A program made the translations under genes and the position numbers. The notes under the pieces were generated by a model. It had not been told where the DNA came from, ran no database searches, and saw only the letters and a program-made list of their open reading frames with translations. From Pocillopora damicornis (Eukaryota), in assembly GCF_003704095.1 (NCBI RefSeq), contig NW_020847208.1:248001-312000 (forward strand): 64,000 nucleotides of DNA. Reading direction: 5' to 3'. Positions 1 to 63,400 of this stretch are shown here, one piece after another. Numbering within the stretch: position 1 is the first letter of the stretch; each line of letters opens with the position of its first letter.

Positions 1-381
1 TTTTCGACTTAATCGAATACACCGACAAACAAACGCTTGATATGAAGCTTCCTTCACTTCTGAAATATGATTCTTCCGGGAACTTTCTGGGTAGGGGACT
101 GCAAACTGTTAAGAAAAATGTTTATGACGTTAGTGCACGACCGGGAGGACATCAAGTACTTGTGATCATCGCGGCAGGAAGCTCACAGGATGATGTGAAA
201 GCACCTTCGCGCGACTTGAGAGACGAGGGTGTCAGGATTTTCTGCGTAGGAATTGGTAATAACGTAGATGTTAATCAACTTCAAAATGTTGTAACAGCTC
301 CTGAAAGGGAACATTTAGCTACGGTGAGTTCAGATAAGCTGGATACACTGCTGGGACCTGTGGTGCAGAATATCAGAAAAG
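1..381 (+). CDS. Gene A exon, vWA domain (partial)
   Basis: Frame open from position 3; VLVIIAAGSSQDDVKAPSRDLRDEGVRIFCVGIG; donor G|gtaaga at 381/382. Confidence 0.85.
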
Positions 382-31103: not shown

Positions 31104-34100
31104 ATGACCTGCATACTTCATCTCCTTCTATTGTGGAATGTCTTCATACGCTGTAGCAGTGGAAACTTTGGTGCTGAAATAAAAAGAGGTGGGGTTCAAA
31201 GAGGGAGTTATTTAATTTCTATATGACACTTTTATGATGGAATTAAAAGAAAAATGGCGTCAGACTAATAAAATAAAGCCGTAATAAGTGGTAGATTATA
31301 AGTTTAAAACTGAGGTGCTTAACGCCACAAACTGAATATAAGGGCTAAAAGCCCAAAGACTCTATTGTTTACTAAGGAGGTGAAAGTAATCATCAGTTTT
31401 TCGCGCCTTGCCTCGTAATTTGCGTTTGGTTCCGCCATGATTAATTTTTTTTAGTTCGACTGGTTTCCAATATTTTTTGCTATTGTAAATAACCGTGGAA
31501 ACTTCAAATTGGTGCATTGGGGATATATTTCTAGTGCGTTCTGTCGGAAAATACAAAACGTTTCACGCGGCTTAAAGCTTTAAAATACTTTGTTTCTCAA
31601 ACAGGAAGAAAGAGAGTTGGAATAAAATCAGCCGAAAACGCCAGCTCTAAAATTTCAACTTCGACTCCAAAGAGCCCTTCCAATGAGAAAACAACGAAAC
31701 ATCGCTCAAAATTAAAATCAATCTCGCAAACATCCTGGGACAGAAGACAACTTATTGCACGATCATCGACAACGCAAGGTAAACACGATTATCACTCAAC
31801 AACAAACATTAATTTGTGTATCACTTCTATAACAAAGAGGCCTGTCATACCACCATAAATCAGTAAGTATGATGTAGAGTTTCATCTTTCTAGAAAAGAT
31901 ACATCGGAATGCAATTAAGCTATTAGCTTGACCGGTGAGGATCCCTGAATCAGCTGCAGGAAGCCACAACTAGAATGGGCCCAGAGTGCTACGACTATTG
32001 AGATTCGGTCGTGATTCAGAAGAAAATTTTTTCGTTTCTGAGCCAAGGCGTTCGAAATAAGATTGGCGCAAATACAGTGTAACGTTCTCTCATGAAGAGC
32101 TACTATTATGTGATTTGCATATCTGCATGTGCATACTTCAATTAACGGTCGCAAATACAAGTTTTTATATTTACTAGTCAAACAAGTCCATTCATAAGAA
32201 AATAATTGTAGAGATGTTCTAATTTCTATCAAAGAGGTACAGATACAGCAATATGCGACCATTTTAACCAGTTTAATCGTGTAGTCACGAAACTCATTCA
32301 TTTCTCGTAGCTTGCAAAACCAAAGTGGACCTTGGATTTCTACTAGATGGTTCCGGAAGTGTCAACCATTATGGTGCTGGTAATTTCGATAAGTGCAAGG
32401 AATTCGTCAAAGCCCTTATACACGCTTTCGTTATATCTCCTGATGATACGCGAGTTGGTGTAATCTTATTTTCCTCCAGAAGTGAACTTCAGTTTGACTT
32501 CACTCAGTTACAAACAGAACAGGCAGTAGAAGCCGCGATTGACAGAATCAAATATCCCGGATATACGACGAAAACTGGCGCTGCACTAAAGATGGCGGGA
32601 GAACGTTTATTCAACAACGTTAGGGGGGGTGTACCCCGAGTGCTCATTGTTATAACTGACGGGAGAGCAGGCGATGACGTGAGAGCTCCTGCGGAAGCTC
32701 TTAGAAACAAAGGAGTTATTATATTTTCAGTTGGGCTTGGCAATTTGAGACGACTAAGGAGATTTCAACCCCAGCTGGAGGCTATGGCGAGTGAATCAAT
32801 ACCGGAGCATTTGTTCACCGCTGATTTTCCGGATATGATGTCTATAGTTACAGCAATACAGACAAACCTATGCAGATGTAAGAAGTCACACTTAATTAAT
32901 GTTTACTTTCCTGATGTGAAGATATGCTTTGTTTTCTTTTGCTCTTCATTCGTTTATGTATATCTGTTAGCCTATGAATGGAGCATGTTTCAGAAGAAAC
33001 TTATTTGCACTTTGTTTCTAATGTTTCTTGTTTCGTGATATTTTTGTTTGTTCGTTTGTTGTACTATTTTGTCGTTGTTTAGTTCTGACTTCGTTTTTAT
33101 CCATAGAATATGTCAATAGAAGCGCCGAACAATATTCTAACATTCAAATGAAACCGAAAATTAGTTCTAGTCATCTAACATTTCTAAGTCTTAACATTGA
33201 GCAACTTGACAAATTCTTCCTCTTTTTCAAAGTTTCTGAAAAAGATATTTCTTTTCTTTTTATTTCTTTCAGCTGCAGCTAAGGCCATCGCAGAAGGAAC
33301 AAGTAAGTTTATAAGATAAGTTTAAGAAATCGCACTCTCTTGACGAGATGAGCTGCTCAATCGCTTTTTTTTTTTAAGTTTTTGCTCGAGTATTTTAGGC
33401 TCTTTGGATTTTGTATATTATTCACCAGTGTTTAAAGGGGAGACCGCCGCTTGTTGTTCCAAACCCTTGTCATTAACTGAATCCCTTTCGATCGAAAGAT
33501 CCTTCGTTTCTATAATTTCCATGAATACCTTAAGTTTTACCGTTGATTGCTGTTGAATTTCTTAATCTTTTGGTGTGAGTTTCACCGTATGTTTGCGTTA
33601 AGTTGAAATTTTCAAATATGATAATCTTTCTTTTTTACTTCTTAATCTTATAGCGGGAGGAGCAAAGAGGGCCGGTGAGTATAAACTCGCTCTATTAGCG
33701 ATGTAACAATCTCCACAGACATTCTCTCTCGGTATAGCTTTCCATACAGTCGGTTACTCCCGACAACAGCAACCACCACTACTGCACGATGGAATCGTTA
33801 CATACTTTTGAAAGTATTCTAAAACATTCTGGAAGCATACAACACAACTATTTTGGTAGCATTACATCGTGACTACCTAAAGTTCCATGATATGCATGTC
33901 AGCATGACTAAGAATTCAAGAATTTTTTTAGATATATATCTTACAGTTGTTATCCATAAAAATCTCATGAAAGACAAATTATTATTTATTTTCAGTGGAC
34001 CTTGCCGTACTTGTAGATGGATCAATGAATATCAAAGGAGGACTGAATTTCCAACTCGTTATGAATTTTGTCACTGACTTCTTCCATTCATTTACTCTGA

Positions 34101-37100
34101 GGGATAACGTTAGATATGGATTGGCTGTCTTTGGCAGCAGCGTTAAGGTAAAATCATGACTATATTAAGCGTGGTTTAGCTCAGCGCTAAAAAATAGCTT
34201 ATTGCAATATCCAAATCGATTTTATATCAGAAACCTCAATTCCTCGGTCTATGATTTTATTAGGACGGGAGTGATTTAATTACTCGTTTGTAAACGAGTG
34301 CATCACTGGCTAAAAAAACAATATAGCTTGAAAATCTTCTTCCTCATTATATTAGGTCGTATTTGGATTTAACCAGTATACCTCTATGTATGATGTCGAT
34401 GCGGAAATAGCAAGTGTAACCTTGGTCGGAGGCAGATGTAATGCAGGCGCTGCACTGATAGAATGCCAGAGATCTCTGTTTGTCGGTAATGCAGGAGGAA
34501 GGAAACGCATTCTTCTTGTCCTCATGGCAGGGAAGTCAATTGATGACGTCTCAGTAGGTGCTGGTTATTTGAAGAAAGCCGGAGTCAGGACAATGGTTAT
34601 TAGAATGGGTAGTTCTTACGAGCAGTCCCAGCTCTCTACTATGGCGTTTACCCCAGATTACATTCTGAGAGCAAACACACTCCTTGAGTTACCTGGGGTT
34701 AGGGAAGAAGCTGCTGGATTTTTATATCAAGGTCCATAGACTCCTTTAATTGATGCTTCTTTTGACACTTGAAGTGATATATTTACGTAATATGGATACG
34801 ATATGATATGCCGTGATACAATACATTACCATGATACCCTACGATACGATACAGCACAGACTCGCTGCGTCTCCCACATACATAATGACCACATTGAGAT
34901 GTAGAGTTAAAAATATGTGAAAAAATACATATCACAAAAAATTCTAAGGAGGACTTGCTACTGTTTGTTTTCCCAGCCAGCGGTATTAATCTCAGAGCAA
35001 GCGCGACGCAGATGGGAGGTATGTTTGGTCTCATGTTGACTGAAACAAGTTTAAATGTTTAATGTCTACTTACCTCACCGGCCGATTCCTTTCAGCTTCA
35101 TTTTTTTGAGGTCACTGTCCTTAGCTTAAACTTTAGCATAAACTATAAATCTTAGCTTAGCACTTTCCTTAGCCTAGCATAAAAAAAAGAACCCGCGTGT
35201 TTTTAAAAAAGTGAAATTGACGAGTTAAAAACGTAACAAAATTATATCTCAGATATTAAAAAAAAAAGACCAAGAAGGGATACCAAAGACGAGTTATTAT
35301 ATTACTGCCATGAATGATTCGTGCAGCTTGCTTCCTCTCAAAAATCTGGGAGCACCTTCAACCACGTCATGACAACGCATTTCTCGGTTCGCTATCCTTA
35401 GGAATTAGATGATGCAGCGTTAATTTTCTGGCTGAAGACTAACCTAATTGTCACTTCATGTCTCCCTCACAGGCTGTAAAAAAAGGAATTACGAATTGAC
35501 GAGTATCTTATCTACGATCATATCAATTAATTTATGCATTGAAATGCTCTTTGTATAAGGTGGTTGTGACCTTGGGTTTATGGTGGACGCCTCATCAAGT
35601 GTTGGTGCGAATTTGCCAAGTGTTCTGAATTTTGTAATCAGCATCGTTCACTCCTTTGCCACCGGTATCGGTATGCGGTATGGAATGGTTACGTTTGGTG
35701 CTCATGCTCAGGTATGATTACATGATTTCTCAAAACATTCTCGTTTGCTATTTAGCAGTAACCGCTGTTAATATTAAATGTGAACATAAACAAGTGACGA
35801 TCTGTGAAAATCAGCCAATCGGCGCTGAGCATCACCATGTAAGTGGTGATAGTTTGCAAGTTCAGTTTTGATTGCGGTTGAATGAAACATTCAGGTTACT
35901 CTTCTGGACTAGTCTCTTCAATTTAGTTTTGCAAAACAATAGCAGCAAAGTGTAGGGCCACCTAAATATGACTCTCACAAGGAAGATGGAATCATGCTTT
36001 CTTTAACCTACAACTCTAGTCTATTCATCCACGTGTCGGGTGATCAACTAAAAGCATTATCGAAACGATTCAATTAGATAGAGAATAATACATGTGTAAG
36101 GTTTTTTTTTTCATTTCCTTGCAGGTTATCTTCCGATTTAATCAGTATACATCACTCTCTGACGTCGACTCAAAAGTTGCAGGTGTGAACCTGCTTGAAG
36201 GCTACAGTAACGCCCACGAAGCTCTTACTCTATGCAACTCAGTTCTTTTTGCCGGTAATGGGGCTGGGAGAAAGAGAGTTTTGATCGTGCTAATGGCTGG
36301 CAGATCGACAGTCAGTTTGACAACAGCTGCCATAACATTGAAAACGGCCAAAGTCAAAGTAATTGCTGTTGGAATGGGTAGCTCATTTTCTAACCAAGAG
36401 CTTATAACTATGGCATATTCTTCATCTTATGCTCTATACTCCAACTCCTTTACTGGTTTAGCAGGAAAAAGGCAGACTGTTTCCGGTTTGGTATCTGAAG
36501 GTAAACGTAATAATAATAATAAAAAAATAACTTGTAGAGCAATTCAGATTGAGCCGTTTTTAACGTAATTCATGGTCCGGGAAACTTGCGCCATTCCCTC
36601 AACCAATTAGGCGCAAAGCCTAAACCAATAACTACTTGATCAAACACTTTCCTCCTGGCCTGTGGTAGTGTTTGAATCCTCGAGTTCACTTCAGTTCTCA
36701 TTCGATCCTTACGATACTAAAATTTGTTGTTATAAACTGTTGTAATTACATACGCATTGGTCTATTGCGACATTAAATCGAAATAAATTCCACCATGCGA
36801 ACTCAATCTGTATCCTTGAGTCGAAGGTCAACTTAAAAGAAAGCAGTTGATAATGCAGTGAATTTTGCAATACAACATTTACATAACTACAATTATAAAA
36901 TTTATTATGAATTTTCAGCAATCAGATATAATCTTTTTACCTTTAGCATCTATTTGCACAGAACTTAAATTAACAATCAAGTTCATGACTCTCTTCTTTA
37001 TAGTTAGTGGTGTGACTGCCATTGGAACTGCGCTTTCCGAAAATGGAGGTTTGTTAAATCATTATTTCAATAGTTTAATGTCATATGGAACTTTGTTTCA

Positions 37101-39352
37101 GCTGTCTTCTTTGTTTATTATTTATTAGGGCATGGAGTCGGCTCCCTGCAATATTTTAGTCATATATGGACAAAATATGTATTGATAATAACATGATTTT
37201 GAGTGCAGTTTGGTTTCAACAAGCACGAGTAAAATTTTTCAAAGACAACAAAATGTGTAGTCTTTGAAAAATTTACAAGTGTGTACTACACCAAATTGCA
37301 AATCATGATTTATTGTTAATAATGTGTACGATCACAGGAAGTCAAGACAGACGAAAATATGAAAGCGTGCGCGCGCTATTTGTAATTAATTTTGCTCTCG
37401 TGTTACAGCTTAATTTGCATTCGTGTTACAACTTTGCACTTGTGTCGCCTGAGAACGCACTCCGTTTTCAGGCAATCAAATTAAATTATTAACGATGAAA
37501 TCTCATTCAAAAGTCTCGCAAATTGTTGAATAAAAGCTCTCACCATTATTTGTTTTGCTTCGTTTTCGATATGTTTAATTTTAGCCTAACTCGTTTACCC
37601 TTCCTCTTTGACCGTTCACCTGGCCCCCTCCTAGTGGAGGGCTTCAAGGGTTCAATGACTTAAAATTAGAGGTTCTTCAAAAAACTGTATAACCTTATTT
37701 ACGGTCTTTAATTTTTTTGTTTTTGTTTGTTTGTTTGGTTGTTTTTTTTTTTGTTTATTTCCTTTCTCGCAACGGCAAACTTAAATTATCAGATTGACGG
37801 TTATTTTGTGAGTCCTGGTTGGCTTTTCTCAATTAAGTTCCCTTAAAATGGGCATATAAAAGAATGCTTAATGCGATATTTACCTTTTTAGCTTGCCAAA
37901 CTCAAGTGGACCTTGGATTCCTGATTGACGGCTCTGGAAGCATAAATTACTTTGGCGCAGGAAATTTCAGAAAGTGTTTGGATTTTGTAAAAGCTCTTAC
38001 TAGAGCTTTTGTTATTTCTCCAACGAAAACAAGAGTTGGGGCTATTGTTTTCTCATACCGCAGTAAAATTCAATTCGACTTCAGCCAGTACCACAGGCAA
38101 TCAGATGTAGAGGCCGCAGTTGATCGCATAGAATACCCCGGACGTTCGACGTACACTGGTGTCGGCCTGAAAATGGCCGGTGAAAAATTATTCAGCAATA
38201 TCAGGAAAGGAGTTCCACGTGTACTGATTGTTATAACGGACGGCTTTTCCCACGATAATGTCGCCGAGCCTTCTGCAGTGCTTAGAAAGGCTGGAGTAAT
38301 AATACTGTCCGTTGGACTGGGAAAGTATTACAATAAAGCTCAGCTTAACGTCATAGCCAGCAACCCACAGGAAGAGCACGTGTTTTCGGTGGATTTCTCT
38401 CAAATGCCGATTATAGTTAGGGCAATACAAGATAGGTTTTGCAGAGGTGAGAAGCGCGTTAGAAGAAGTAACCTCAGATCTCGTGAGGATGGTATATTGC
38501 CTAGTACTATATATTGATACTTGGTGATATACAGAAAAAAGAATATGATCGATATTATTTAGTGTACCTCGTTCCTGTACCTGAAGGAAAGTAAATAGCA
38601 AATAGCGTGCTCCACATTTAAAACACAAGTGTACTTTGAAGTTATTCGAAAAACAGTTGTTTGATCTTAACGCGACCTTTGCCTTGTTGATAAAGTTGTT
38701 ATTTTTTTCATCGCGCATTGCATCATGGTTAAACCACATTTTGACGTTCAGTCTTTGGATGGTTGACTGCACATAGGAATCTCCTCAAATTTGAAAGATA
38801 CTCTGAAAGATACACATTTCATCTCGAGCTCAATCCGTTCTGACAAGTGGCTAGCGATAAATGAAAACTGGTTCTCGAGAAAACAATAAATATAATAAAT
38901 CATTGACTTTCTATTAAAAGAGCCTACGCAATGACCGCCATTTAAAATAACTGATTCAATTGATGTGTTGTTTTGTAGATTCCGCAAAGGCCGTCTCTGA
39001 AGGAGCAAGTAAGTAATACTGAGGCGTCAAAAAACTAATTTAGAGATTCCAGTGCATGGGCCGATAGGTGAGTGAATTCATTGATGAACGACTCAACTGA
39101 TGATAGTGATCGATAGCCTGGTCGATGGACTGACTGAATCACTTACTGCCAAACTGACTGCCTGCGTGATTAACTAAATTATCAAATGACACAGTGACTG
39201 ATTGATTGAAGTTTTTTTTTATGTGTTACAACTTTCTTTTATAATGGTTTATTTCAGCCGGGACAACTGTCACCACCACGGGAAGCGGAGGTAAGTCTTT
39301 CTATTGTACTTATACTCCGTGAAGAGATCCATGAATTTAATTCATTGTCGCA

Positions 39353-39408
<56 letters not shown>

Positions 39409-54400: not shown

Positions 54401-57400
54401 CCACCTGCAATACGAGATTGGTTACACATTAAATGGTGTTTTCCGTGAAATTCAGAGTATCTTGTTATCTATTTGCGTGTGTCTGTTTAATTTAGGTTCA
54501 AAGTGCAATACGCAAGTGGACCTTGGATTCTTGATAGACGGTTCCGGAAGCATAAATAAGTACGAACCAGGCAATTTCAAACGGTGTTTGAAGTTCGTAA
54601 AGGAAATTATAGGTGCCTTCGTCATTTCTCCCACGGCTTCAAGAGTTGGAGCGATTGTATTTTCATACCATAGCAAACTCCAGTTCGGTTTTAGCCAGTT
54701 CAAGACTAACCAGGAAGTAGAAGAAGCGGTTGACCGTATAGAGTACCCTAACCATTCAACGTACGCCGGCAAAGGTCTCAAAATGGCGGCTGAAAAACTC
54801 TTTAACGAGCCTAGAAATGGTGTTCCCCGTGTGCTTATTGTAATAACTGACGGAAGATCCAGAGATGGCCTTATACAACCTTCAGAAGAACTTAAAAGGT
54901 CTGGGGTAATAATAATATCGGTTGGAATCGGCAAGCGCTATGACAAAGCTCAACTTAACGTCATGGCAAGTAACCCGAAAGAGAAGCACGTTTTTACTGC
55001 TGAATTTTCCCAAATGTCGAATGTAGTCAACGCCTTACAGCAATCGTCATGCGAAGGTAGGCTGTGGAAGTACTCTGAAAGCTCTGATGATAAGACAAAA
55101 TGTTCACGACATATTCCCGCCAGTTGTAAAAGGTTCTAGTTGTATCGAATTTTATTCACACACTTCAGTATTACTGTAGTTAAGAACATTTTTTACAATA
55201 ACTTACGACACTATCCTACGCCTAGTGGTCGTGAGCCATAACAAATAAAAATATATACAATGAAAATTACATCATATCGCGTTAAATAGGCGTGGAAATA
55301 ACGTTCTCTCCCCTATCGATGAATAAAAATTGATTACATCTTGTATTTCTTTCACAAGTAGGCCTTTATCGGCATGGACCTGTTAAATTAATTTTAAGCT
55401 ACGTTCTGTATCCTGGTTATGTGAGATTCATTCATCTAATCGAATTTTTGTAATAGTCTCACATAAACACTTTTTTTTTTGTGAAATTAAGCTTTTAAAC
55501 GATTTTAAGTTTGCTAAATAATTTGGTTATTTTTGTACTATCTGCCATTTTTTTTCTGAATCACTCAACCTTACGTCTCACCTTTACTTATGTGACATAA
55601 CTAGTGTGCAATATTAGGTTTATCGTGACAGTATTTCTTTCATTTTGCCTTTAGCTGCCTCTACGGCTGTTGCAGAAGGAACGAGTGAGTGACACGTTTG
55701 ATAAATGACTTCGCTTTCTTTTGTCTATGCTATATCTGCTTTGTTGTAGCTGTTTTTTATGTGCTTGAAATTCGTTGTTCGAGTCCCCCTTATTTACATC
55801 AGCTTCAATCCCTCTCATTCATACACACTTTGATGCTGTTGCAGTTGTCATTTCAAAGGATCTTTCATCCTTTTGCTTTTTCATGACAGATTCAGTCCGC
55901 ATATATGATAATTTTACGTTTGATGTTACTTAAATATGTGTTAGCTTTGCGTTTGATCTCACTTTGGTATGCTTTTTTTGGCTTCTCAGCGGATGTTGTA
56001 GACTCTTCAGGTAAGTACATGGGACTTAGTGACCTAGTGTAAATTTTCTTAATCTAGATTTTTTCATTTACACATCAGAAATTAGGGCTTATTGTACCAG
56101 TTAGCTCAGTCACACCAGCTTTATCCTCTCTCGCTTTCCCTCTCAAATAAATAACTAAATGAGTGCATTCTTTGATCTTCTGGTGAGACGACAATTGTGC
56201 AATTCAAGGATTTTCTGCGCTGCTGAATACGGACAGGGATGCAAATTTTAATAAGTCCTTAGCCGACACTGATAAAAGTTTGAATCCGTAAAATCTGTAT
56301 AAATGAGACCATTCATTAGGCGAAATGGACAAAATTAAATTTCTCAACTTTCAAGTGACGCAAATCCATGTTTTAAGGAGACTTTTGTAATTCAGTGGGT
56401 GTCCGCCCAATAGACTCCATTCTAAATCTGCAGACTGTCTGTCTGTCTGTCCGTCTTTCCGGACGTCGGTCTGTCGACGTTTCCTACCGTCTGTCTAACA
56501 GCTTTTTCGTCCATCTGTACGTTTGTTGACTAACCTTGAATAACATTCCTTTGATTAGGGGTCGGGGATAACTGCTTTGCAGATTCCTGCTACATGTTTA
56601 CCAAAGCGGGGAAAACATGGCCTGAAAACCAAGACAGCTGCACAGACAAGGGGGGTCACCTGGTTTCTATCGAGACCGAGGAGGAATGGAAATTCCTCAG
56701 TGGAAAGATCAAAACACTCTCCCCTCCCGGTGTCCATGAGTGGCACATAGGATTAAGAAATGGAGGTCAGCAATGGATTTGGGCTAATGGAAAACCTCTC
56801 ACAATTGGAAAATGGCAAACAAACGAGCCTTCTGGAGACGGGAAGGTCGTGGTGATGTCAAAGGCTACAGGACTGTTTTCGGATGTTCCAGATAACAGCA
56901 GGAAAGCCTACATTTGTGAAATACCTCTAGGTAAGAAAACTAACCTACAGCTAAACCCAAAATCCCTCAAAGAATAATGAATTACGCTGATAACTTGAAA
57001 AAAAAAACATCAGAAAGATTCGAAGAGAAGTCAATGGCGTGACATAATTACTCCAACATTATATACAATAAAAAAACATCGGGTCGAGTGTTTGTTACAT
57101 TTAGCGATTCTTCTGTGTCTAGATAGTCGGTATTCTTCTATATTGTCAGTACTCTTTGCATAACAAGTTTGCATTGAATGCTGTGATACATATGGCATAA
57201 CGAGCCCCCCACCTCCGTTACCCCGAACTGAACTGTCCCCTATTGTAATTCTGGCTGTTTGTTCCCATGACATTCCACTTTGTGAAACGGTTCAATCGGT
57301 TCTCTTGTATTCCTCAGCTGCTGATATTAACAACAGCAAAGGAACAGGTCAGTGACTTACAACTATAATAGCAAGACAGGTTTAAAAGCTATAGACTAGT

Positions 57401-60400
57401 AGATCACATTATGTGTTAAAGAATCTCACAGAATGTTTATAAGAGACGAAAAAAGCAGCTTAAAAGAATGTTAACTTTTTTTTAATGCTGGACACGATAT
57501 TTTCGGGAGATTATTGAATACGAATTAATTGAATTTGGATTGGATTGTATCCCCCTTTCCACTCCTTAAGCCTCTCTTTGCCACAATAAGTAAACATTGC
57601 GTGTGGAGGTCGACATGAAAACCCGTGTCACACTGTTTGACACAATGTGACCTCCCCTCCCCTTTAAAAAATCCTGGCTACACCCCTGAAAGGGTGTACA
57701 ATAAACGAAAGAGGGATTGCGGAACTACTTGCCATGTATAATTAAAATAAATTTATCTCGAAAATTTCTTTCTGTAGTTGGTTGTGACCTGGCCATCATG
57801 GTAGATGCTTCATCCGGTCTGGGTGGAAAAGAAAATGCCAAACTTCTGTTTAACTTTGTGACGGCTGTGTTTCACTCGTTTGATATCAGCAGTGGAGAAA
57901 CACGATATGCATTAGTACGCTTTGGTAAAACTACTGAGGTATGGATAAAATCTAACTTTGTCTTCTTTTAATGAAGTTTATAACGTTTGCCTCCTGATAT
58001 GATTATTACGAACCGTTGGAAAAGATCAAGCACGAATGGAAATGAACGATTTAACGTCCACGCAGTTAGGTATTCGAGTACACGTACCTTCTTTGCTGGG
58101 ATCAACTATAATAATTATCTTCTTATATTTTTTGGAGAATCAGATAGCTAACCTATAGACCTCGCTACCATAGCAATAATAAAATAAACCTTTCAAAATA
58201 AATCTTTACAATTTTTTTCTTTTTGTGTTTTGTGTTGCAAAATTTAAGCAGATTAAAAAAATTAAATTTCGCTTTTTATTTAATTTTCACGGATAAAAAT
58301 TTCGCTGGTGATGAAGGAAACGCCTCCCAAACTTTACATTTTAATTTAGGGAATATGAAAATTATGGTGGAACGCCATCGAACACCAATCTACGCAGCTA
58401 AGAAATCAATAATGGCGTAATATTTATTGTTCCATTTATACCAAAAAGACTGAAGACTGAAATATAAAAATTGATAGTCCTTATTCCTGATAAACTAGTA
58501 AATTTTTTTTTCTACTTCATTAGGGAACGAAGACGGTTTCTAACAGCCTTCTATACGATATGTTCTCTAGGTTGTATTTGGGTTTGATAGGTACAAAACT
58601 ATCGATGATATTGACGAGGAGGTTGCCACTACATCCTTAGCTGAACTTGGCAGCTGTGATGCTGATGCAGCTCTACAGGAATGCAAAAGGGCACTATTTG
58701 TTGGTGCCGCTGGAGGAAGAACACGTATCCTGCTTGTACTCATGGCAGGAAAGTCTGCAGATGGCGTCACGAACGGTGCTGGATCATTGGCATCTGGCGG
58801 AGTCAAAATAATCACCGTTGGAATTGGTGGTCTTTTTGATGGTTCGCAGCTTTCAACAATGGCAACGTTGCCTTCTTATAAATTGAGCTCCATATCATTT
58901 ATAAAACTTCTTAGTATATCTAGGAGCACATCTTCTCTCATATCCCAAGGTACGTACATCTTTTTTGCAACCCCCATTCCAGTTCTTGGAACGTCACTTT
59001 TTAATTCTGAGGAACACAAGCGCTTTCCAAATTTTGATACGGGGAGGCCTGACCAACGTCTTACCCCAATGCATAGCACTTTTATCCGAAAAAAAAGAAA
59101 CCCTGCCGTAAAACTTCCAATTGAAAAAAGAAACTCATTTCAATAAATATGTCATTACGAACGCTGTAGATCATTGGAGACCCTCTCATATACCTGGCTG
59201 ACAGATCTCTTACCTCAGCATTATCATACTTTCACCCATGAAACGCCATTTAGTACTGTCTGAAAAAGGATCATCAGCAGGTGCCCCACTCCCTTCGATC
59301 ACGTTTTCTCGCTGATAGCAAACTGTTGGAAGGAGCTATAAACTCCACAAAAAACAGCTAGCCATCGCAGAATACTTTAATCAAGTAGTAATGTATATTT
59401 TTCTTGCTACGTTTTGTTATGCTTGATTGTAGCTGGTGGTATAAACGTTGTTGGAAACATGGACACATCAGAAGGTAGGGTGTACCCTCCATATCCTGTT
59501 CTTATTTTCTATTCATTTCACGATGCATTATGACATTTGCACTAATCTGAAATCTATTTCAAGGTGGCTGTGACTTGGCGTTTATGGTGGATGTTTCATC
59601 GAGCATAACGAGCCAAGACTTGAACCTTGCACTGAACTTTATCTCCAAAGTTTTTCATTCGTTTACTCTCGGTAACGGCGTGCGATATGGACTTCTAGTT
59701 TTCGGGGAAAGCGCAAAGGTACGTTCAAGACTGCTTGTCTCCTTACAACGCAGTTATTCCAGTTACTAATGATTAGCGGAGAAAACAAATTAAAAAATCA
59801 TTTAAAATTATTGAAGTTTCGTACATTTTCTTACAGCTGGTGTTTGGATTCAGTCAGTATAGTTCTCTGGCACAAGTGGATTCAGCAGTCGCAAGTGTAG
59901 AGATGATAAATGGCAACTGTAATGCAGAGGATGCCTTTGATCAGTGTGGTACAGAGCTGTTTTCTGGTGACAACTCTGGCAGATCTCGTGTTCTGGTTGT
60001 GCTCATGGCAGGGAAATCAGCTCAAAATGTATCACGTTCTGCTGGGTCATTGAAAACAGCCGGAGTGAAAATTATTGCTATCGGGATGGGTGGTTCAGTT
60101 GACAAGTCGGAATTGTCAACCATGGCATTTTCGTCTTCCAACGTCAAGACTGTTGCTTCATTCGCTGGTCTAGGACAGCTTGATAAAGTTGTGTCTCCCC
60201 TTGTGTCACAAGGTATCAAGTTAAAGTTTTGGTTCTCTCTTTGATTACAATTGATTTTCAAAATATACGTATACTTTTATGGCTGATATTTGTTATCTTT
60301 TGCAGCTGGTACCATCAAAGGCAATGGAACCGCTCTGGCAGCAGGAGGATCAGGTTTGTAACATTCTTGATATTACAATCGCCAAAGCATTTACCATATT

Positions 60401-63400
60401 CACCTAAAATTTGAAACATATTGAGAAGCATTCCATACTATCGTCACGGGTTGGTACGTAGTTTAGTTTTACCACTGACACGCTGACGGCACGACACGCG
60501 AAGAGGCTGACGAGACGAACAGACGAACTAGCGAGGCAACAAATGAGAGAAAGAAAGATGAAATGAGTATGAAATTGACTAACAACATTGTGTGCCCGCG
60601 ACTTGAGCAAACCAGATACATCTGAAATAAGGCTGAAATGAAACGCAGATAAATTGAAAATTAAATTAGAAAATATAGCCAGCAGCATGTTAGAAGGGTA
60701 TTGCCCTGCATGTTCGATAACTTATTTTATATATCATATCATCGGCATCTTACGTGTGATACCTTTATTCTAATGCATCATTTTATCCTTCAGCTTTATG
60801 ACAACATTTTTTTAAGTGTACGTGTCAACTTTTATTCCTAGCCTTTAAAGATCAAGTCGAAATTGGATTCCTTATCGATGGATCTGAGAGAATAAACAAG
60901 TACGGCCCAGACAATTTCAAAAAGATCTTGGAATTTGTAAAATCCCTCACCAAGCCTTTCGAAATTTCTCCGACTAAGGCAAGAGTTGGAGTAATCGTCA
61001 TGTCGCAGAAAAGTGAATGTAAATGTGACTTTAACAAATCTAAATCAAGGGCAGAAGTAGAGGCAGCCATAGACAACATACCATACCCTAATGCGCAGAC
61101 GTATGATGGTAAGGCGTTGGAAATCGCAGCCGACGAGTTATTCAGTGACGCCAGGGATGGTGTACCTCGTATACTTGTGGTAATTTCAGGGTCATGGATC
61201 GGTAATGATGAATCGGAGACTTCTGGCGAACTTCACCGAGCAGGAGTAAAAATCGTATCTATTGGACTTGGAAAGCACTTTAACCTGGCTCAACTTTATG
61301 TCATGGCGAGTCAAACAAAAGACGATCACGTATTCACAGTCGACTTTCCTCAAATCCCAAATATCGTCTGGGCAATACAGGATACTTTGTATATTGGTTA
61401 GTGCTATTACTCAACATTATCACCCAAAACGCACATTAAACACTCATATTATCGCAGTTTACGAGAAAAACACAATTCAAACCGAGGTAAATTTGAAGTC
61501 CTCATGGCACCATAAAGTGTTTTACAATAAACTCCCCGGTCTTGTTTCTTTTCATAATAATTTTTGGCTTTTTTGTTCCTTTTTAGTCGCTACTAAAGCT
61601 GTCAAGGAAGCACCAAGTAAGTACAGGTTTTGTTCTTGCCGTTTTTCAAACGGTTGGTACATGCATGGAGAGCTATCAAATCACCAAGAAACTTTTCAAA
61701 ACCTAGACTGTTACTACCTTCCTGAAGCCGTAACGAGGCCTACTCATCTTGATACTTGATCAAGTTAATGTACAGTTAAAATGCCAAATAGCAAAATTAT
61801 CATAATTATTCTGTACATAAATTCTGATGACTTGGTAGTGTTTAATCATTTTATCTTTCCATTTTATACCACCAGAGCCAACTACAACAAGCGGTAAGAA
61901 TTATTTTAGTTACTAGAACAGTATTTTTACAGTTTGATATTGTATTTCATTCAATTTTTTATTATTTATTGTCCTCGTTGTTTTTTTCAATGTCTTGTTT
62001 AACTCATGAATAAGATTCTTTTGTACATTTCTTTGTGTTACACTCCATTTTATTCCTTTTATACTCATCATTTACCTCTCTAATCTACCTTTTCGTCTAC
62101 AGCCCCAACAACTACAAACGGTGAGTAGTACCACTTGACTAGTTTTTTTGTTTGTTTGTTTGTTTGTTTGTGGTTCTGACATGCCTTAAAATAATGTTTT
62201 GGTGATGATTAAGTTTGACATATCTCGAATAGAAAGTAACACTCTTATCTTCCCAAATGTAGCACCACAAGTGACAACTCAAGCCAAAACAACAAGTGGT
62301 AAGCAACTGTGTTAATTTTGGATTTTCTGATTAAATTATGCTACTCCATAATATTAACTATGCATTATTTCATCTTCTGCAGCATCTCAAGTAACAACTA
62401 CAAGTGGTACGTCAAATCTGTTAACTTTAATCCCGTTGCCTTTTCATCACTTCATTTCCTTAAATGCTTTCTGTTTTAATCTCATTTACGTTTAAACACG
62501 CACTAACATCATAATCGTTATTATCATTATCATCATCCCTATTTTCCAATTTTGGTCGGGGTTGTTATCGTTTCCAATGTTCTTTTTTTATTCAGCACAA
62601 AAAACTACAAATGGTGAATCAAATATATCAATTTTTGCTGCATTACCTCCCTACAGCACGTAGCTTTCTTATCATTATTATTCGCGCGTTTCTGCCTTTT
62701 TCCTTTTTCGTAAAAAACATTTTTCTCTCTCCAAACACAGCACCTCAAGTCACAACACAAGTAACAACTACAGCTTGCATTTTGTCTTCTCATCATTTGC
62801 CACGCATGTTTTACTCGGCTTAATTAAGTCCCGAGGCTATGTCACCTTATAAAGAACGAAACTGACGATAGTGACCCACATCAATGGCTGTCAATCTCTT
62901 TATACGCATACGCATGCACCGCTTGAACAAAATCCTACAGAAAGTCATTTCAATCCAAGCAAACACATACGATAATGTTTTTCTTATTTATTCAGCACCC
63001 CAAGTCACAACTCAAGTTACAACAACAAGTGGTTTGTATGCCTCGTTTCTTTTGAGCTGGATTTAATCTTACTCGTGTTTTCAGACACAAAAACTGCTCT
63101 TGACTGTCAAATATGGTTCATTTTTGATTAACCTGTTCTCTTTCCAAACACAGCACCACAAGTGACAACTCAAGGAGCGAGTACAAGTGGTGTGTCTTAG
63201 TTTGACGTTTATTCGTTTTCTATAATCATCTGCATCACTCTAACATCTCCTGTGATATTGCCTATGTTCAAAAAACTCTATTTACCCTAAGGGAAGACAC
63301 GCCTGGGGAATGCAAGAAATTCATCGCCGAAATTATATTAGTTATTAAGAATTTCATACGCTGATCGCTGCAACTGGTTTTAATGTCTTGGAAGACTAAC

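What the first reader, a model, noticed from the sequence alone, without database searches (positions are those of the whole stretch)
31104..61616. Giant periodic adhesin-like protein built from a higher-order [vWA-A / CTL / vWA-B / vWA-C] cassette repeated about 5.3 times
Seen in sequence: about 5-6.5 kb genomic periodicity. A-type vWA is always one 543-567 nt exon. B- and C-types are always split by a phase-0 intron at the same site (149-161 nt plus 370-382 nt). CTL exons sit at the same slot in cassettes 3-5. Introns are not visibly similar while the exon layout is fixed, so the expansion is old and maintained. No collagen, EGF or TSP domain is seen in the window. Automated pipelines would likely label it 'collagen alpha(VI)-like' and fragment it. 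Inference: a multivalent matrix, mucus, adhesion or recognition scaffold with regularly spaced protein-binding and lectin-like sites.
Basis: partly seen in the sequence, partly recalled or inferred. Interest (0 to 1): 0.78.

Follow-up and report, generated by a model that had tools for sequence, protein, structure and literature searches.

The report
Giant coral vWA/lectin cassette matrix gene
A stony coral carries one expressed gene of about 41 kb and 80 exons for a secreted protein of roughly 4,300 residues, built from a six-fold repeated set of adhesion-type (vWA) and lectin-like modules. The layout is real, old and shared with other corals, but the protein is an unstudied variant of a familiar kind of matrix protein and its job is untested.

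Summary
On the + strand, 31104-61616 holds a signal-peptide-like exon and a higher-order cassette: single-exon MIDAS-type vWA (A), C-type lectin-like domain, then two MIDAS-poor vWA domains (B, C), each split by a phase-0 intron. It repeats every 5.0-6.4 kb.

Spliced RNA contigs join cassette 3 to cassette 4 in frame, and one contig points to the C4-A5 join, so these are not separate genes.

- Every domain is separated by its own 21-48-nt linker micro-exon.
- Every module is phase 1-1.
- Cassette 2 keeps a truncated lectin remnant.
- The gene probably runs about 8 kb past the window: a Thr-rich micro-exon array in the lectin slot of cassette 6, then B6, C6, A7 and a Cys/His-rich tail with a furin-type site.

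Two other coral genera keep the same cassette order. In one of them cassettes 1-3 match one-to-one and the cassette-2 lectin is intact.

No full-length model with this layout ranked among the top 150 of one protein search. Public annotations call related single exons "vitrin-like", "cartilage matrix protein" or "hypothetical".

The best reading is a secreted multivalent matrix or adhesion scaffold. Compartment and ligands are unknown. The scan has already reported other giant modular matrix genes in this genome.

The parts
31104..31188 (+). Candidate first exon: ATG, hydrophobic signal-peptide-like stretch, short stretch ending KR, phase-1 donor GAG|GTGGGG
   Evidence: Sequence only. No RNA support. 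Not found within about 1 kb upstream of A1 in L024 or L009.
32311..32877 (+). A1: single-exon vWA, 567 nt, MIDAS complete
   Evidence: Pfam VWA 1.1e-37; boundaries; MIDAS; orthologous exon in L024 and L009.
33273..33302 (+). La1 linker micro-exon, 30 nt
   Evidence: Splice-PWM prediction; peptide resembles the RNA-verified La4a.
33996..34147 (+). B1 first half, 152 nt
34356..34731 (+). B1 second half, 376 nt
   Evidence: Pfam VWA 1.4e-10
34977..35018 (+). Lb1 linker micro-exon, 42 nt
   Evidence: PWM prediction; same size as the RNA-verified Lb4.
35560..35711 (+). C1 first half, 152 nt
36125..36500 (+). C1 second half, 376 nt
   Evidence: Pfam VWA 9.5e-13
37004..37048 (+). Lc1 linker micro-exon, 45 nt
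   Evidence: PWM prediction
37892..38446 (+). A2: single-exon vWA, 555 nt, MIDAS complete
   Evidence: Pfam 4.5e-39; 83% nt to the L024 orthologue.
38979..39008 (+). La2a linker micro-exon, 30 nt
   Evidence: PWM prediction; lies inside a conserved block shared with L024 (38932-39014, 79.5%).
39258..39290 (+). La2b linker micro-exon, 33 nt
   Evidence: PWM prediction
39802..39879 (+). Remnant of the cassette-2 lectin exon: the first ~26 residues, 54-58% identical to CTL3/CTL4, then broken off
   Evidence: tblastn; HMM hit; this slot holds an intact lectin exon in L024.
40244..40288 (+). Lctl2 linker micro-exon, 45 nt
   Evidence: PWM prediction
40524..40678 (+). B2 first half, 155 nt
   Evidence: 87% nt to L024
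41176..41551 (+). B2 second half, 376 nt
42063..42104 (+). Lb2 linker micro-exon, 42 nt
   Evidence: PWM prediction
42399..42556 (+). C2 first half, 158 nt
43166..43547 (+). C2 second half, 382 nt
43861..43905 (+). Lc2 linker micro-exon, 45 nt
   Evidence: PWM prediction
44028..44582 (+). A3: single-exon vWA, 555 nt, MIDAS complete
   Evidence: nearest solved relatives are collagen VI alpha3 and mussel PTMP1.
44887..44916 (+). La3a linker micro-exon, 30 nt
   Evidence: PWM prediction
45245..45277 (+). La3b linker micro-exon, 33 nt
   Evidence: PWM prediction
45351..45725 (+). CTL3: C-type lectin-like domain exon, 375 nt
   Evidence: Pfam Lectin_C 1.8e-14
45846..45890 (+). Lctl3 linker micro-exon, 45 nt
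   Evidence: PWM prediction
46295..46449 (+). B3 first half, 155 nt
46861..47236 (+). B3 second half, 376 nt
47417..47458 (+). Lb3 linker micro-exon, 42 nt
   Evidence: Its donor is RNA-supported (joint 47458|47552); acceptor by phase and AG.
47552..47709 (+). C3 first half, 158 nt
   Evidence: RNA joints on both sides
48110..48485 (+). C3 second half, 376 nt
   Evidence: RNA joints on both sides
48634..48681 (+). Lc3 linker micro-exon, 48 nt; joins cassette 3 to cassette 4
   Evidence: RNA joints on both sides, in two runs of two studies for the 5' joint.
48998..49540 (+). A4: single-exon vWA, 543 nt, MIDAS complete
   Evidence: RNA joints on both sides
49929..49958 (+). La4a linker micro-exon, 30 nt
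   Evidence: RNA joints
50292..50315 (+). La4b linker micro-exon, 24 nt
   Evidence: RNA joints
50497..50865 (+). CTL4: C-type lectin-like domain exon, 369 nt
   Evidence: Pfam 2.6e-14; RNA joints; AlphaFold pLDDT 94 and TM 0.91 to lithostathine.
51203..51247 (+). Lctl4 linker micro-exon, 45 nt
   Evidence: RNA joints
51383..51537 (+). B4 first half, 155 nt
   Evidence: RNA joints
51739..52114 (+). B4 second half, 376 nt
   Evidence: 5' joint RNA-supported; 3' end by homology and GT.
52218..52259 (+). Lb4 linker micro-exon, 42 nt
   Evidence: Donor RNA-supported (joint 52259|52718)
52718..52866 (+). C4 first half, 149 nt
   Evidence: Acceptor RNA-supported; translation
53079..53448 (+). C4 second half, 370 nt
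   Evidence: An X5 contig runs on from it, through 127 other letters, into an A-type exon; I read that exon as A5.
54496..55056 (+). A5: single-exon vWA, 561 nt, MIDAS complete
   Evidence: Pfam 5.7e-41
55990..56010 (+). La5b linker micro-exon, 21 nt
   Evidence: PWM prediction. La5a, Lctl5 and Lc4 were not located with confidence.
56559..56930 (+). CTL5: C-type lectin-like domain exon, 372 nt
   Evidence: Pfam 4.4e-15
57778..57938 (+). B5 first half, 161 nt
58571..58949 (+). B5 second half, 379 nt
59433..59474 (+). Lb5 linker micro-exon, 42 nt
   Evidence: PWM prediction
59564..59718 (+). C5 first half, 155 nt
59837..60212 (+). C5 second half, 376 nt
60306..60353 (+). Lc5 linker micro-exon, 48 nt
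   Evidence: PWM prediction
60851..61396 (+). A6: single-exon vWA, 546 nt; MIDAS degenerate (DGSER, ISGS) and the capping cysteines are lost
61587..61616 (+).
   Evidence: PWM prediction; same family as La1-La4a
62103..64000 (+). Start of a Thr-rich array of 18-36-nt micro-exons in the lectin slot of cassette 6. It runs to about 66378 in window numbering, past the window end.

Best explanation
This is most likely one protein-coding gene on the + strand, from about 31104 to about 72050 in window numbering, roughly 8 kb past the window end. It has about 80 exons and about 13 kb of coding sequence, for roughly 4,300-4,400 residues.

Layout:
- A signal-peptide-like exon.
- Six cassettes of [A = MIDAS-type vWA in one exon | 1-2 linker micro-exons | lectin-like domain | linker | B = split vWA | linker | C = split vWA | linker].
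- A terminal vWA (A7).
- A Cys-rich motif, an RKKR furin-type site and a His-rich end.

The lectin slot is empty in cassette 1, a dead remnant in cassette 2, intact in cassettes 3-5, and filled by a Thr-rich (mucin-like) micro-exon array in cassette 6.

Shown: the domain identities, the exon phases, the in-frame splicing across cassettes 3-4, the conservation in other coral genera, and purifying selection.

Inferred: the protein is secreted and works as a beads-on-a-string multivalent matrix or adhesion scaffold.
- The five complete MIDAS sites (A1-A5) would bind ligand carboxylates through a metal ion, as in collagen VI, matrilin, PTMP1 and integrin I domains.
- The B and C domains keep DxSx(S) but have Cys in place of the MIDAS Thr and Ala in place of the Asp, and 9 of 10 carry a C-x8-C pair. 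They would act as rigid spacers or protein-protein modules.
- The lectin-like domains add a second, probably non-canonical, binding surface.
- The Thr-rich stalk and Cys-rich tail would extend and anchor or cross-link the molecule.

Because every module is a phase 1-1 unit, cassettes could be duplicated, lost or swapped without breaking the frame.
For: - Pfam VWA and Lectin_C on the exons.
- Full map and phases.
- GT..AG joints in RNA contigs link Lb3, C3n, C3c, Lc3, A4, La4a, La4b, CTL4, Lctl4, B4n and B4c, then Lb4 to C4n. An X5 contig runs from C4c into an A-type exon that I read as A5. All joints are in frame.
- An independent assembly of another sample (L017) is 98.8% identical over 42273-49584, with the same order.
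- Position-specific clades for A and C.
- One-to-one orthology of A1,B1,C1,A2,CTL2,B2,C2,A3,CTL3 in another genus (L024, 72-87% nt in exons). A->B->C and C->A->CTL order in a third, more distant coral (L009, L018).
- Constraint: exon divergence 0.81% against 1.6% elsewhere, 14 synonymous and 11 non-synonymous changes, no exon indels.
- MIDAS table.
- Nearest solved relatives of A are collagen VI alpha3 and mussel byssal PTMP1.
- The lectin-like domain folds confidently as a CTLD (pLDDT 94; TM 0.91 to 1qdd).
- Downstream B6, C6, A7 and tail exons have fitting sizes and phases.
Against: - No RNA evidence for the first exon, for cassettes 1-2 and 5-6, or for the link to the part beyond the window. 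The contigs are short (at most 1.2 kb laid here), so one uninterrupted 13-kb mRNA is not shown.
- Three expected linker exons (Lc4, La5a, Lctl5) were not located.
- The signal peptide rests on sequence alone, and the exon was not found in the short upstream flanks of two orthologous loci.
- The lectin-like domain lacks EPN/QPD plus WND and the C3-C4 disulfide, so sugar binding may be absent.
- A6, A7 and the cassette-2 lectin are degenerate, so part of the array may be decaying.
- Nothing here shows the tissue, the compartment or any ligand.
Confidence: 0.72

Rival explanations
1. It is specifically a structural component of the stinging or adhesive capsules (cnidocysts). It would be made in developing cnidocytes and built into the capsule or tubule matrix, like NOWA and the cnidocyte-specific vWFA proteins of sea anemones.
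For: - In Nematostella about a third of matrisome genes are expressed in the cnidocyte lineage, among them the NOWAs and several vWFA-domain proteins (PMC12549020). From memory, not shown in the passages read: NOWA carries a C-type lectin-like domain.
- The candidate first exon has a short stretch ending in KR right after the signal-like segment. From memory, this resembles the pro-parts of nematocyst proteins.
- Neighbours in the window include a Cys7/poly-Pro, Cys-Pro-rich gene at about 12.1-13.9 kb and ShKT-bearing genes.
- The tail is Cys-rich, followed by RKKR and a His-rich end.
Against: - No expression data by cell type.
- No canonical minicollagen cysteine-rich domain (C-x3-C repeats) and no SCP domain in the gene.
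- Gene neighbourhood is weak evidence in animals.
- The curated Nematostella matrisome tables name no vWFA-plus-CTLD protein.
Confidence: 0.22
2. It is a skeleton-facing matrix or anchoring protein, either in the skeletal organic matrix or in the calicoblast or desmocyte attachment. The lectin-like domains would contact calcium carbonate or its glycoprotein matrix.
For: - The best structural match of CTL4 is lithostathine, a Ca2+-independent CTLD that, from memory, is known for binding calcium carbonate.
- From memory, vWA and CTLD proteins recur in biomineral matrices: Pif and BMSP, perlucin, SM30/50.
- The cassette gene was found only in stony-coral DNA here.
Against: - The lead of lithostathine over ordinary lectin domains is small (TM 0.91 against 0.82-0.88).
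- No acidic low-complexity regions.
- The four papers listed by the one skeletome search were judged by title and abstract only and did not suggest such a protein.
- No proteomic link.
Confidence: 0.13
3. The cassettes are separate tandem genes (a vWA/lectin gene family) that only look like one gene.
For: Public gene calls treat related single exons as stand-alone proteins of 180-309 residues.
Against: - Spliced RNA contigs cross the cassette 3/4 boundary through a dedicated linker exon, and a further contig points to the 4/5 boundary.
- No module starts with an ATG plus signal peptide or ends with a stop.
- All modules are phase 1-1 and flanked by AG/GT.
- The stand-alone 'proteins' are mostly prokaryote-style ORF calls on metagenome contigs.
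Confidence: 0.03
4. It is a decaying or non-functional repeat array, or an assembly artefact of a shorter gene.
For: The cassette-2 lectin is a dead remnant. A6 and A7 have lost MIDAS residues and capping cysteines.
Against: - All other exons are open.
- It is transcribed and spliced.
- Changes are biased towards synonymous sites and exons diverge half as fast as introns.
- Cassettes differ by 25-35% at the DNA level, so they cannot be collapsed or expanded by an assembler.
- A second assembly and another genus show the same order.
Confidence: 0.04

Closest known systems
Collagen VI alpha3-type vWA arrays (best solved match of the A domain, 9han_C)
   Same: Long tandem run of extracellular vWA domains. 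The A domains have a complete MIDAS and terminal capping cysteines. Best PDB sequence match, E 5e-82 summed over domains.
   Different: No Gly-X-Y helix anywhere in the gene. No Kunitz or FN3 tail was seen, though these were not scanned for specifically. Lectin-like domains are interleaved. Two of every three vWA domains are a MIDAS-poor subtype with a fixed internal intron.
Mussel byssus proximal thread matrix protein 1 (PTMP1, 4cn8)
   Same: Invertebrate secreted protein made of vWA domains and used in an extracellular load-bearing material. Second-best PDB match of the A domain, E 1.3e-29.
   Different: PTMP1 has two vWA domains and nothing else. This gene has about 19 vWA domains plus lectin-like domains, a Thr-rich stalk and a Cys-rich tail.
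Matrilin / cartilage matrix protein and vitrin (the names that public pipelines give to related single exons in Desmophyllum and Oculina)
   Same: MIDAS-type vWA adaptor domains of extracellular matrix.
   Different: No LCCL domain (vitrin), EGF domains or C-terminal coiled coil (matrilin) were seen, though none of these was scanned for specifically. The names reflect single-exon fragments, not the architecture.
NOWA and the cnidocyte-specific vWFA proteins of Hydra and Nematostella
   Same: Cnidarian secreted proteins of a specialised matrix (PMC12549020). From memory, NOWA combines a C-type lectin-like domain with Cys-rich ends.
   Different: No SCP/CAP domain and no canonical minicollagen-type cysteine-rich domains. 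From memory, NOWA has no vWA. No vWFA-plus-CTLD protein is named in the Nematostella matrisome tables.
Mannose-receptor family CTLDs, and lithostathine / type II antifreeze CTLDs
   Same: CTLD fold (TM 0.8-0.91), WIGL-type core and the C1-C2 disulfide. Best sequence matches are first CTLDs of the FcRY, PLA2R, DEC-205 and MRC1 group.
   Different: EPS/QPS replaces EPN/QPD, and F-(D/G/S)-D replaces WND. The C3-C4 disulfide is absent in all copies and in relatives from other corals.
Other giant modular matrix genes already noted by this scan in the same genome (vWA/LamG; GGP-rod/LamG; EGF-rod/ZP)
   Same: Very large one-domain-per-exon genes for secreted matrix proteins, expressed and fragmented in annotations (AI notes, not checked here).
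   Different: Different domain sets. None of those notes describes a fixed A/lectin/B/C higher-order cassette.

Membership tests
vWA domain (Pfam PF00092) | Profile match above Pfam's gathering score (23.8 bits) | tested here: met
   A1, A2 and A5 exons score 130-141 bits. The B1 and C1 second-half exons score 42-49 bits on their own. The remaining vWA exons were assigned with a local HMM.
vWA domain, metal-binding (MIDAS) subtype | DxSxS, a Thr in the T-x-T-G loop and an Asp in the xxTDG strand | tested here: met
   Complete in A1-A5. NOT met in A6 (DGSER, ISGS), A7 (DGSSA, VVAG) or any B/C domain (Thr replaced by Cys, Asp by Ala). So this applies to 5 of about 19 vWA domains.
C-type lectin-like domain (Pfam PF00059) | Profile match above the gathering score (22.6 bits) and the CTLD fold | tested here: met
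   54-57 bits for CTL3-5. AlphaFold pLDDT 94, pTM 0.87. Foldseek probability 1.00, TM 0.91 to 1qdd.
C-type lectin (Ca2+-dependent sugar-binding CRD) | EPN or QPD motif plus WND at Ca2+ site 2 | tested here: not met
   NEPS or NQPS, and F-D/G/S-D instead of WND, in CTL3-5. Relatives in other corals keep EPS...FND.
C-type lectin-like domain, canonical long form | Both core disulfides, C1-C2 and C3-C4 | tested here: not met
   C1 (NSC) and C2 (ICE) are present. The C3 and C4 positions hold non-Cys residues in all three copies and in 22 relatives.
Collagen VI | Triple-helical Gly-X-Y domain flanked by vWA domains | tested here: not met
   No run of 5 or more Gly-X-Y in any + frame between 31000 and 72100.
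Matrilin / cartilage matrix protein | EGF domains and a C-terminal coiled-coil oligomerisation domain | tested here: inconclusive
   The Pfam scans covered only the vWA and lectin exons plus two other frames. The remaining open frames look non-coding. The tail is Cys/His-rich. No dedicated EGF or coiled-coil scan was run.
NOWA / minicollagen-type cnidocyst wall proteins | SCP/CAP domain and C-x3-C-x3-C-x3-C-x3-CC cysteine-rich domains | tested here: not met
   The tail reads C-x2-C-x-C-x5-C-x2-C. No CAP domain match in the exons scanned.
Secreted protein | N-terminal signal peptide | tested here: inconclusive
   An ATG at 31104 is followed by a 12-residue hydrophobic core and small residues before a possible cleavage site. 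No predictor and no RNA evidence were available.
Mucin-like stalk | Ser/Thr/Pro-rich repeats | tested here: inconclusive
The PWM scan finds at least 14 in-phase 18-36-nt exons, most coding P/S-x-x-T-T-T-S-type units, between 62103 and 66378.

The most novel reading that the evidence does not exclude
The cassettes are not interchangeable repeats but a fixed, position-specific ruler. Each numbered cassette has its own orthologue in other coral genera, and one MIDAS site recurs per roughly 650-residue period. The slot after each A domain is a swappable socket: empty, lectin, dead lectin or mucin stalk. If so, the protein would template regularly spaced attachment of a partner (minicollagen or collagen fibres, or the skeleton-facing matrix) in a structure found only in stony corals or hexacorals, such as the spirocyst or nematocyst wall or the desmocyte anchor.
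Probability: 0.12. Interest if true: 0.65.

Novelty: new variant of a known kind. Interest (0 to 1): 0.42.

Why it matters
Reef corals build and hold their tissues, stinging capsules and skeleton with secreted matrix proteins, most of them unstudied. This gene has three uses.

1. It is a clean example of exon-phase-symmetric module shuffling. Six cassettes have each kept their identity since before coral genera split, and one slot has been emptied, killed or refilled with a different module.
2. It defines two conserved domain subtypes that could be tested directly: a vWA with Cys in place of the MIDAS Thr plus a C-x8-C pair, and a lectin-like domain without the C3-C4 disulfide.
3. It shows that public annotations report related exons as small 'vitrin-like', 'cartilage matrix protein' or 'hypothetical' proteins. 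Expression and proteome studies that rely on those models would miscount or miss such a gene.

It does not open a long-standing question, and giant modular matrix genes are common in this genome.

Tried and rejected
1. Full-length relatives. An HMMER search of 1.84 billion representatives with the A3 exon listed generic multi-vWA proteins at 24-42% identity. Local typing of all 150 found none with the A/CTL/B/C pattern. Only single-exon ORF fragments were close (P0109, P0140, P0143).

2. Lectin hits in large-genome corals (L011-L016, L019). No vWA lay within 10 kb. These loci are either the same gene with long introns or other members of the lectin subfamily, some of them tandem lectins. They were uninformative and not used.

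3. L017 looked at first like a second species with the cassette. It is 98.8% identical to the window, so it counts only as an independent assembly.

4. The nearest lectin paralogues in this genome (C2915, C1395) are not next to vWA exons, so no second cassette gene was found that way.

5. Conservation of the signal-peptide exon in L024 and L009: nothing found in the 0.9-1.1 kb available upstream.

6. Literature. Coral and octocoral skeletome, nematocyst proteome, Stylophora cell atlas supplement, and vitrin/matrilin plus Pocillopora searches. Judged by titles, abstracts and two supplement word searches, none pointed to a protein of this architecture. P0196 (Oculina 'vitrin-like') could not be located on a contig.

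7. Short 21-nt matches joining 52392-52412 to 50590-50610 in three RNA runs were treated as chance or unrelated transcripts.

The B/C vWA domain, which is split over two exons, was therefore neither folded nor searched as a whole. Frame continuity was checked inside scripts by carrying split codons from exon to exon, and no joined sequence was saved. The N run at 7883-7892 was left alone.

Full report
WHERE WE ARE. The window is G000:C3843:248001-312000 of a 234-Mb, 4,393-contig genome. RNA runs that hold the sequence are labelled coral metagenome or transcriptome. From memory, the assembly size and contig count match the published Pocillopora damicornis assembly. GC is 36-40% throughout.

I built local HMMs from these exons and mapped every copy. 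I then fixed the exon ends by AG/GT, reading phase and comparison between cassettes.
- A exons are 567, 555, 555, 543, 561 and 546 nt.
- B and C first halves are 149-161 nt and second halves 370-382 nt.
- The internal intron is phase 0 and always falls between ...FG-x-x-x-K/E and (V/I)VFGF.
- A-exon starts lie 4,970-6,355 bp apart.
- Lectin exons sit between A and B in cassettes 3, 4 and 5.

Self-BLAST of the region finds only exon-to-exon matches at 65-75% identity, type with type, and nothing in introns. A maximum-likelihood tree of the part of the domain shared by all types places A1-A6 in one clade (100/98) and C1-C5 in another (93/96). The B domains form an unresolved grade next to C. The unit that was duplicated is therefore the whole cassette, and the duplications are old.

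ONE GENE, NOT MANY. I laid contigs of four RNA runs from three studies on 47400-53390. They show eleven introns, all GT..AG after adjusting the cut. One of these is the 50316-50496 intron, which the aligner reported as a GA..TC joint with six letters between.

The chain is Lb3 | C3n | C3c | Lc3 | A4 | La4a | La4b | CTL4 | Lctl4 | B4n | B4c, then Lb4 | C4n. One X5 contig runs from C4c, through 127 further letters, into an A-type exon that lies outside the laid stretch. I read that exon as A5. Translating exon by exon with the split codon carried over gives an open frame through all of them.

The C3-to-A4 link, through a dedicated 48-nt exon, crosses a cassette boundary. Its first joint is seen in two runs from two studies. 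Contigs are short, so a single 13-kb molecule is not shown, but separate genes per cassette are excluded for cassettes 3-4, with indirect evidence for 4-5.

(a) Linker micro-exons. Each domain is followed by its own small exon of 21-48 nt that codes 7-16 residues rich in G, S, T, A, P and V. A splice-site PWM trained on this gene's own exons recovers the RNA-verified linkers. It predicts look-alikes at the same slots in the other cassettes, for example A-x-x-A-(I/V)-x-E-G-T after every A and GG(I/V)... after every B. One predicted linker (38979-39008) lies in a block conserved with another genus. Three expected linkers (Lc4, La5a, Lctl5) were not found with confidence.

(b) Phase symmetry. Every single-exon module and linker is a multiple of 3 nt and phase 1-1. 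Each split vWA is 2+1 mod 3. Any module or cassette can therefore be gained, lost or skipped without breaking the frame.

(c) A dead lectin. Cassette 2 retains the first ~26 codons of a lectin exon at 39802-39879, 54-58% identical to CTL3/CTL4, and then breaks off. Cassette 1 has no trace.

(d) The gene probably continues. After A6 and a linker that ends at 61616 come at least 14 in-phase 18-36-nt exons, most coding Thr-rich units, from 62103 to about 66378. Then follow B6 (67374-67528 plus 67788-68163), C6 (69025-69182 plus 69716-70094), a seventh and divergent single-exon vWA (71022-71582) and a 36-nt Cys-rich exon. A last exon carries more cysteines, RKKR and a His-rich end before a stop near 72050. 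All of these fit the sizes and phases of the in-window exons. Their splicing was not tested here; an earlier follow-up note (s1-762911) reports it for the micro-exon array.

Cassette 6 thus has a mucin-like array in the slot where cassettes 3-5 have the lectin. The in-window coding sequence is about 10.6 kb. The whole comes to about 13 kb, or roughly 4,300-4,400 residues.

GENE LIMITS. Upstream, a ShKT-type exon (29001-29159) and an exon ending ...EDAGFPEYSHKFDK-stop (to 29514) look like the end of the previous gene. At 31104 an ATG opens a hydrophobic signal-like segment. It is followed by a short stretch ending KR and a good phase-1 donor at 31188. This start rests on sequence only. The vWA exons at 1-7497 and 20661-21314 belong to other + strand genes of a local vWA-rich cluster.

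DOMAIN SUBTYPES.
- A1-A5 have a complete MIDAS (DGSGS, ST/TYTG, ITDG) and Cys near both ends. A6 and A7 have lost MIDAS residues.
- B and C domains keep D-x-S-x-(S/N/G). They have Cys at the MIDAS Thr position and Ala at the Asp position, and 9 of 10 carry a C-x8-C pair.
- By sequence the A domain is nearest to collagen VI alpha3, then to mussel byssal PTMP1, then to integrin I domains.
- The lectin-like domain is nearest to the first CTLDs of the mannose-receptor family. With an alignment of 25 coral relatives it folds at pLDDT 94. Its best structural match is human lithostathine (TM 0.91), ahead of many ordinary C-type lectin domains at 0.82-0.88.
- The lectin-like domain has the WIGL-type core and the C1-C2 disulfide. 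It lacks the C3-C4 pair, and it has NEPS or NQPS and F-(D/G/S)-D where sugar-binding lectins have EPN or QPD and WND. Relatives in other corals share these traits, so this is a conserved subfamily. This genome holds about 50 further copies elsewhere, and the two nearest are not next to vWA exons.

CONSERVATION AND CONSTRAINT. Three independent pieces of DNA bear on this.

(i) L017, a contig from another sequencing run, is 98.8% identical to 42273-49584 and collinear with it. It confirms the assembly. Differences fall at 0.81% of exon sites against 1.6% elsewhere, with 14 synonymous and 11 non-synonymous changes and no exon indel. That is purifying selection.

(ii) L024, from a 987-kb contig of another coral genome, carries A1, B1, C1, A2, linker, CTL2, B2, C2, A3 and CTL3 in that order. 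Each exon's best match is the same-numbered exon of the window, at 72-87% nt. Introns do not align. The cassette-1 lectin slot is empty there too, and the cassette-2 lectin is intact. The array therefore predates the split of these genera, and the cassette-2 lectin died on the window's lineage.

(iii) Two scaffolds of one Tara Pacific coral metagenome are more distant, at 55-71% amino-acid identity. They carry A1-like -> B -> C first half (L009) and C second half -> A2/A3-like -> lectin (L018). The split-intron site is the same.

IS IT KNOWN? An HMMER search of 1.84 billion representative proteins with the A3 exon returned generic multi-vWA proteins. None of the 150 best has the cassette pattern when typed with the local HMMs.

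The word-index searches with CTL4 and A2 returned mostly single-exon ORF calls from coral assemblies. The few named entries are "hypothetical protein" (Desmophyllum, 179-180 aa), "Cartilage matrix protein" (Desmophyllum, 196 aa) and "vitrin-like" (Oculina, 309 aa).

The literature searches listed no paper that points to this architecture, judged by titles, abstracts and two supplement word searches. The Nematostella matrisome paper shows that vWFA proteins and the NOWAs are part of a cnidocyte-specific matrix.

HOW IT PROBABLY WORKS. Shown: a spliced, conserved, constrained gene built from extracellular module types.

Inferred:
- It is a secreted beads-on-a-string scaffold.
- One metal-dependent binding site (A) recurs per cassette.
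- Two MIDAS-poor vWA domains per cassette act as spacers or self-association modules.
- A non-canonical lectin-like surface is present in three cassettes.
- A glycosylated stalk and a Cys-rich, proteolytically trimmed tail serve for extension and anchoring or cross-linking.

Where it acts is open. The candidates are cnidocyst matrix, skeleton-facing matrix, mesoglea and surface mucus. I give the generic scaffold reading 0.72 and rank the compartments as rivals.

VERDICT. The feature is real, accurately observed and ancient. It is a new domain architecture within a well-known kind of protein. This scan has already met several other giant modular matrix genes in the same genome. Interest is moderate.

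PROCEDURE NOTES. The N run at 7883-7892 was not touched.

Noticed in passing
window 1-7497 and 20661-21314 (+); also about 3.3 kb upstream of the window: A run of single-exon vWA domains (Pfam E 1e-17 to 1e-27) belongs to one or more other + strand genes. About 8-15 kb upstream of the window there are further vWA exons on the minus strand. The region is a cluster of vWA-rich genes.
   Followed up: partly
window 12106-12486 and 13421-13933 (+): An open frame with seven consecutive Cys, long poly-Pro and many C-P-x-x-C-type motifs, preceded by an exon ending ...CCSVCCPGCE. It is a Cys/Pro-rich protein that recalls cnidocyst wall proteins. No Gly-X-Y helix was seen in the frames printed.
   Followed up: partly
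window 29001-29159, 29389-29514 and 25314-25553 (+): A ShKT-like six-Cys exon, and two exons that carry the shared motif ED(I/A)GFPEYS(R/H)KF close to a stop. They look like the ends of two upstream paralogous genes.
   Followed up: no
about 13.6-28.7 kb beyond the window end (G000:C3843 about 325600-340700): The next + strand gene begins with an A-type vWA that is 66-68% nt identical to A1-A5. It is followed by split and single-exon vWA exons, with no lectin exon detected in the 40 kb fetched. It is a paralogue without the lectin slot.
   Followed up: partly
G000 contigs C2654, C267, C2476, C560, C4347, C2083 and others: About 50 further copies of the same lectin-like subfamily (40-57% identity to CTL4). 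Many lie in tandem clusters, and a few have stops.
   Followed up: partly
window 49540-49867, 51087-51273 and 52478-52740: Contigs of the metatranscriptome runs X2 and X3 lie on introns. They are unspliced pre-mRNA or DNA carried over in the libraries. No exon-skipping joint was seen.
   Followed up: no
window 50590-50610 and 52392-52412: In three RNA runs one contig type touches both 21-nt places, with 26 other letters between and about 200 unrelated letters on each side. It is probably an unrelated transcript that shares short words. Unexplained.
   Followed up: no
window 39355-39408, and about 65754-65796 in window numbering: A short tandem 3-nt-register repeat in the cassette-2 intron matches a stretch in the Thr-rich micro-exon region at about 90% identity.
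   Followed up: no
L019 (Desmophyllum pertusum MU825947.1), L015 and L016 (Tara metagenome): In other corals, members of this lectin subfamily occur as tandem lectin exons 0.35-4 kb apart, with no vWA within 10 kb. The NCBI model OS493_037662 joins parts of two of them.
   Followed up: partly
L014, locus coordinates 19049-19777: A CAP/SCP-domain ORF lies 9 kb downstream of a 63%-identical lectin exon in another coral. From memory this is the domain pair of NOWA, though in the opposite order. Not examined.
   Followed up: no
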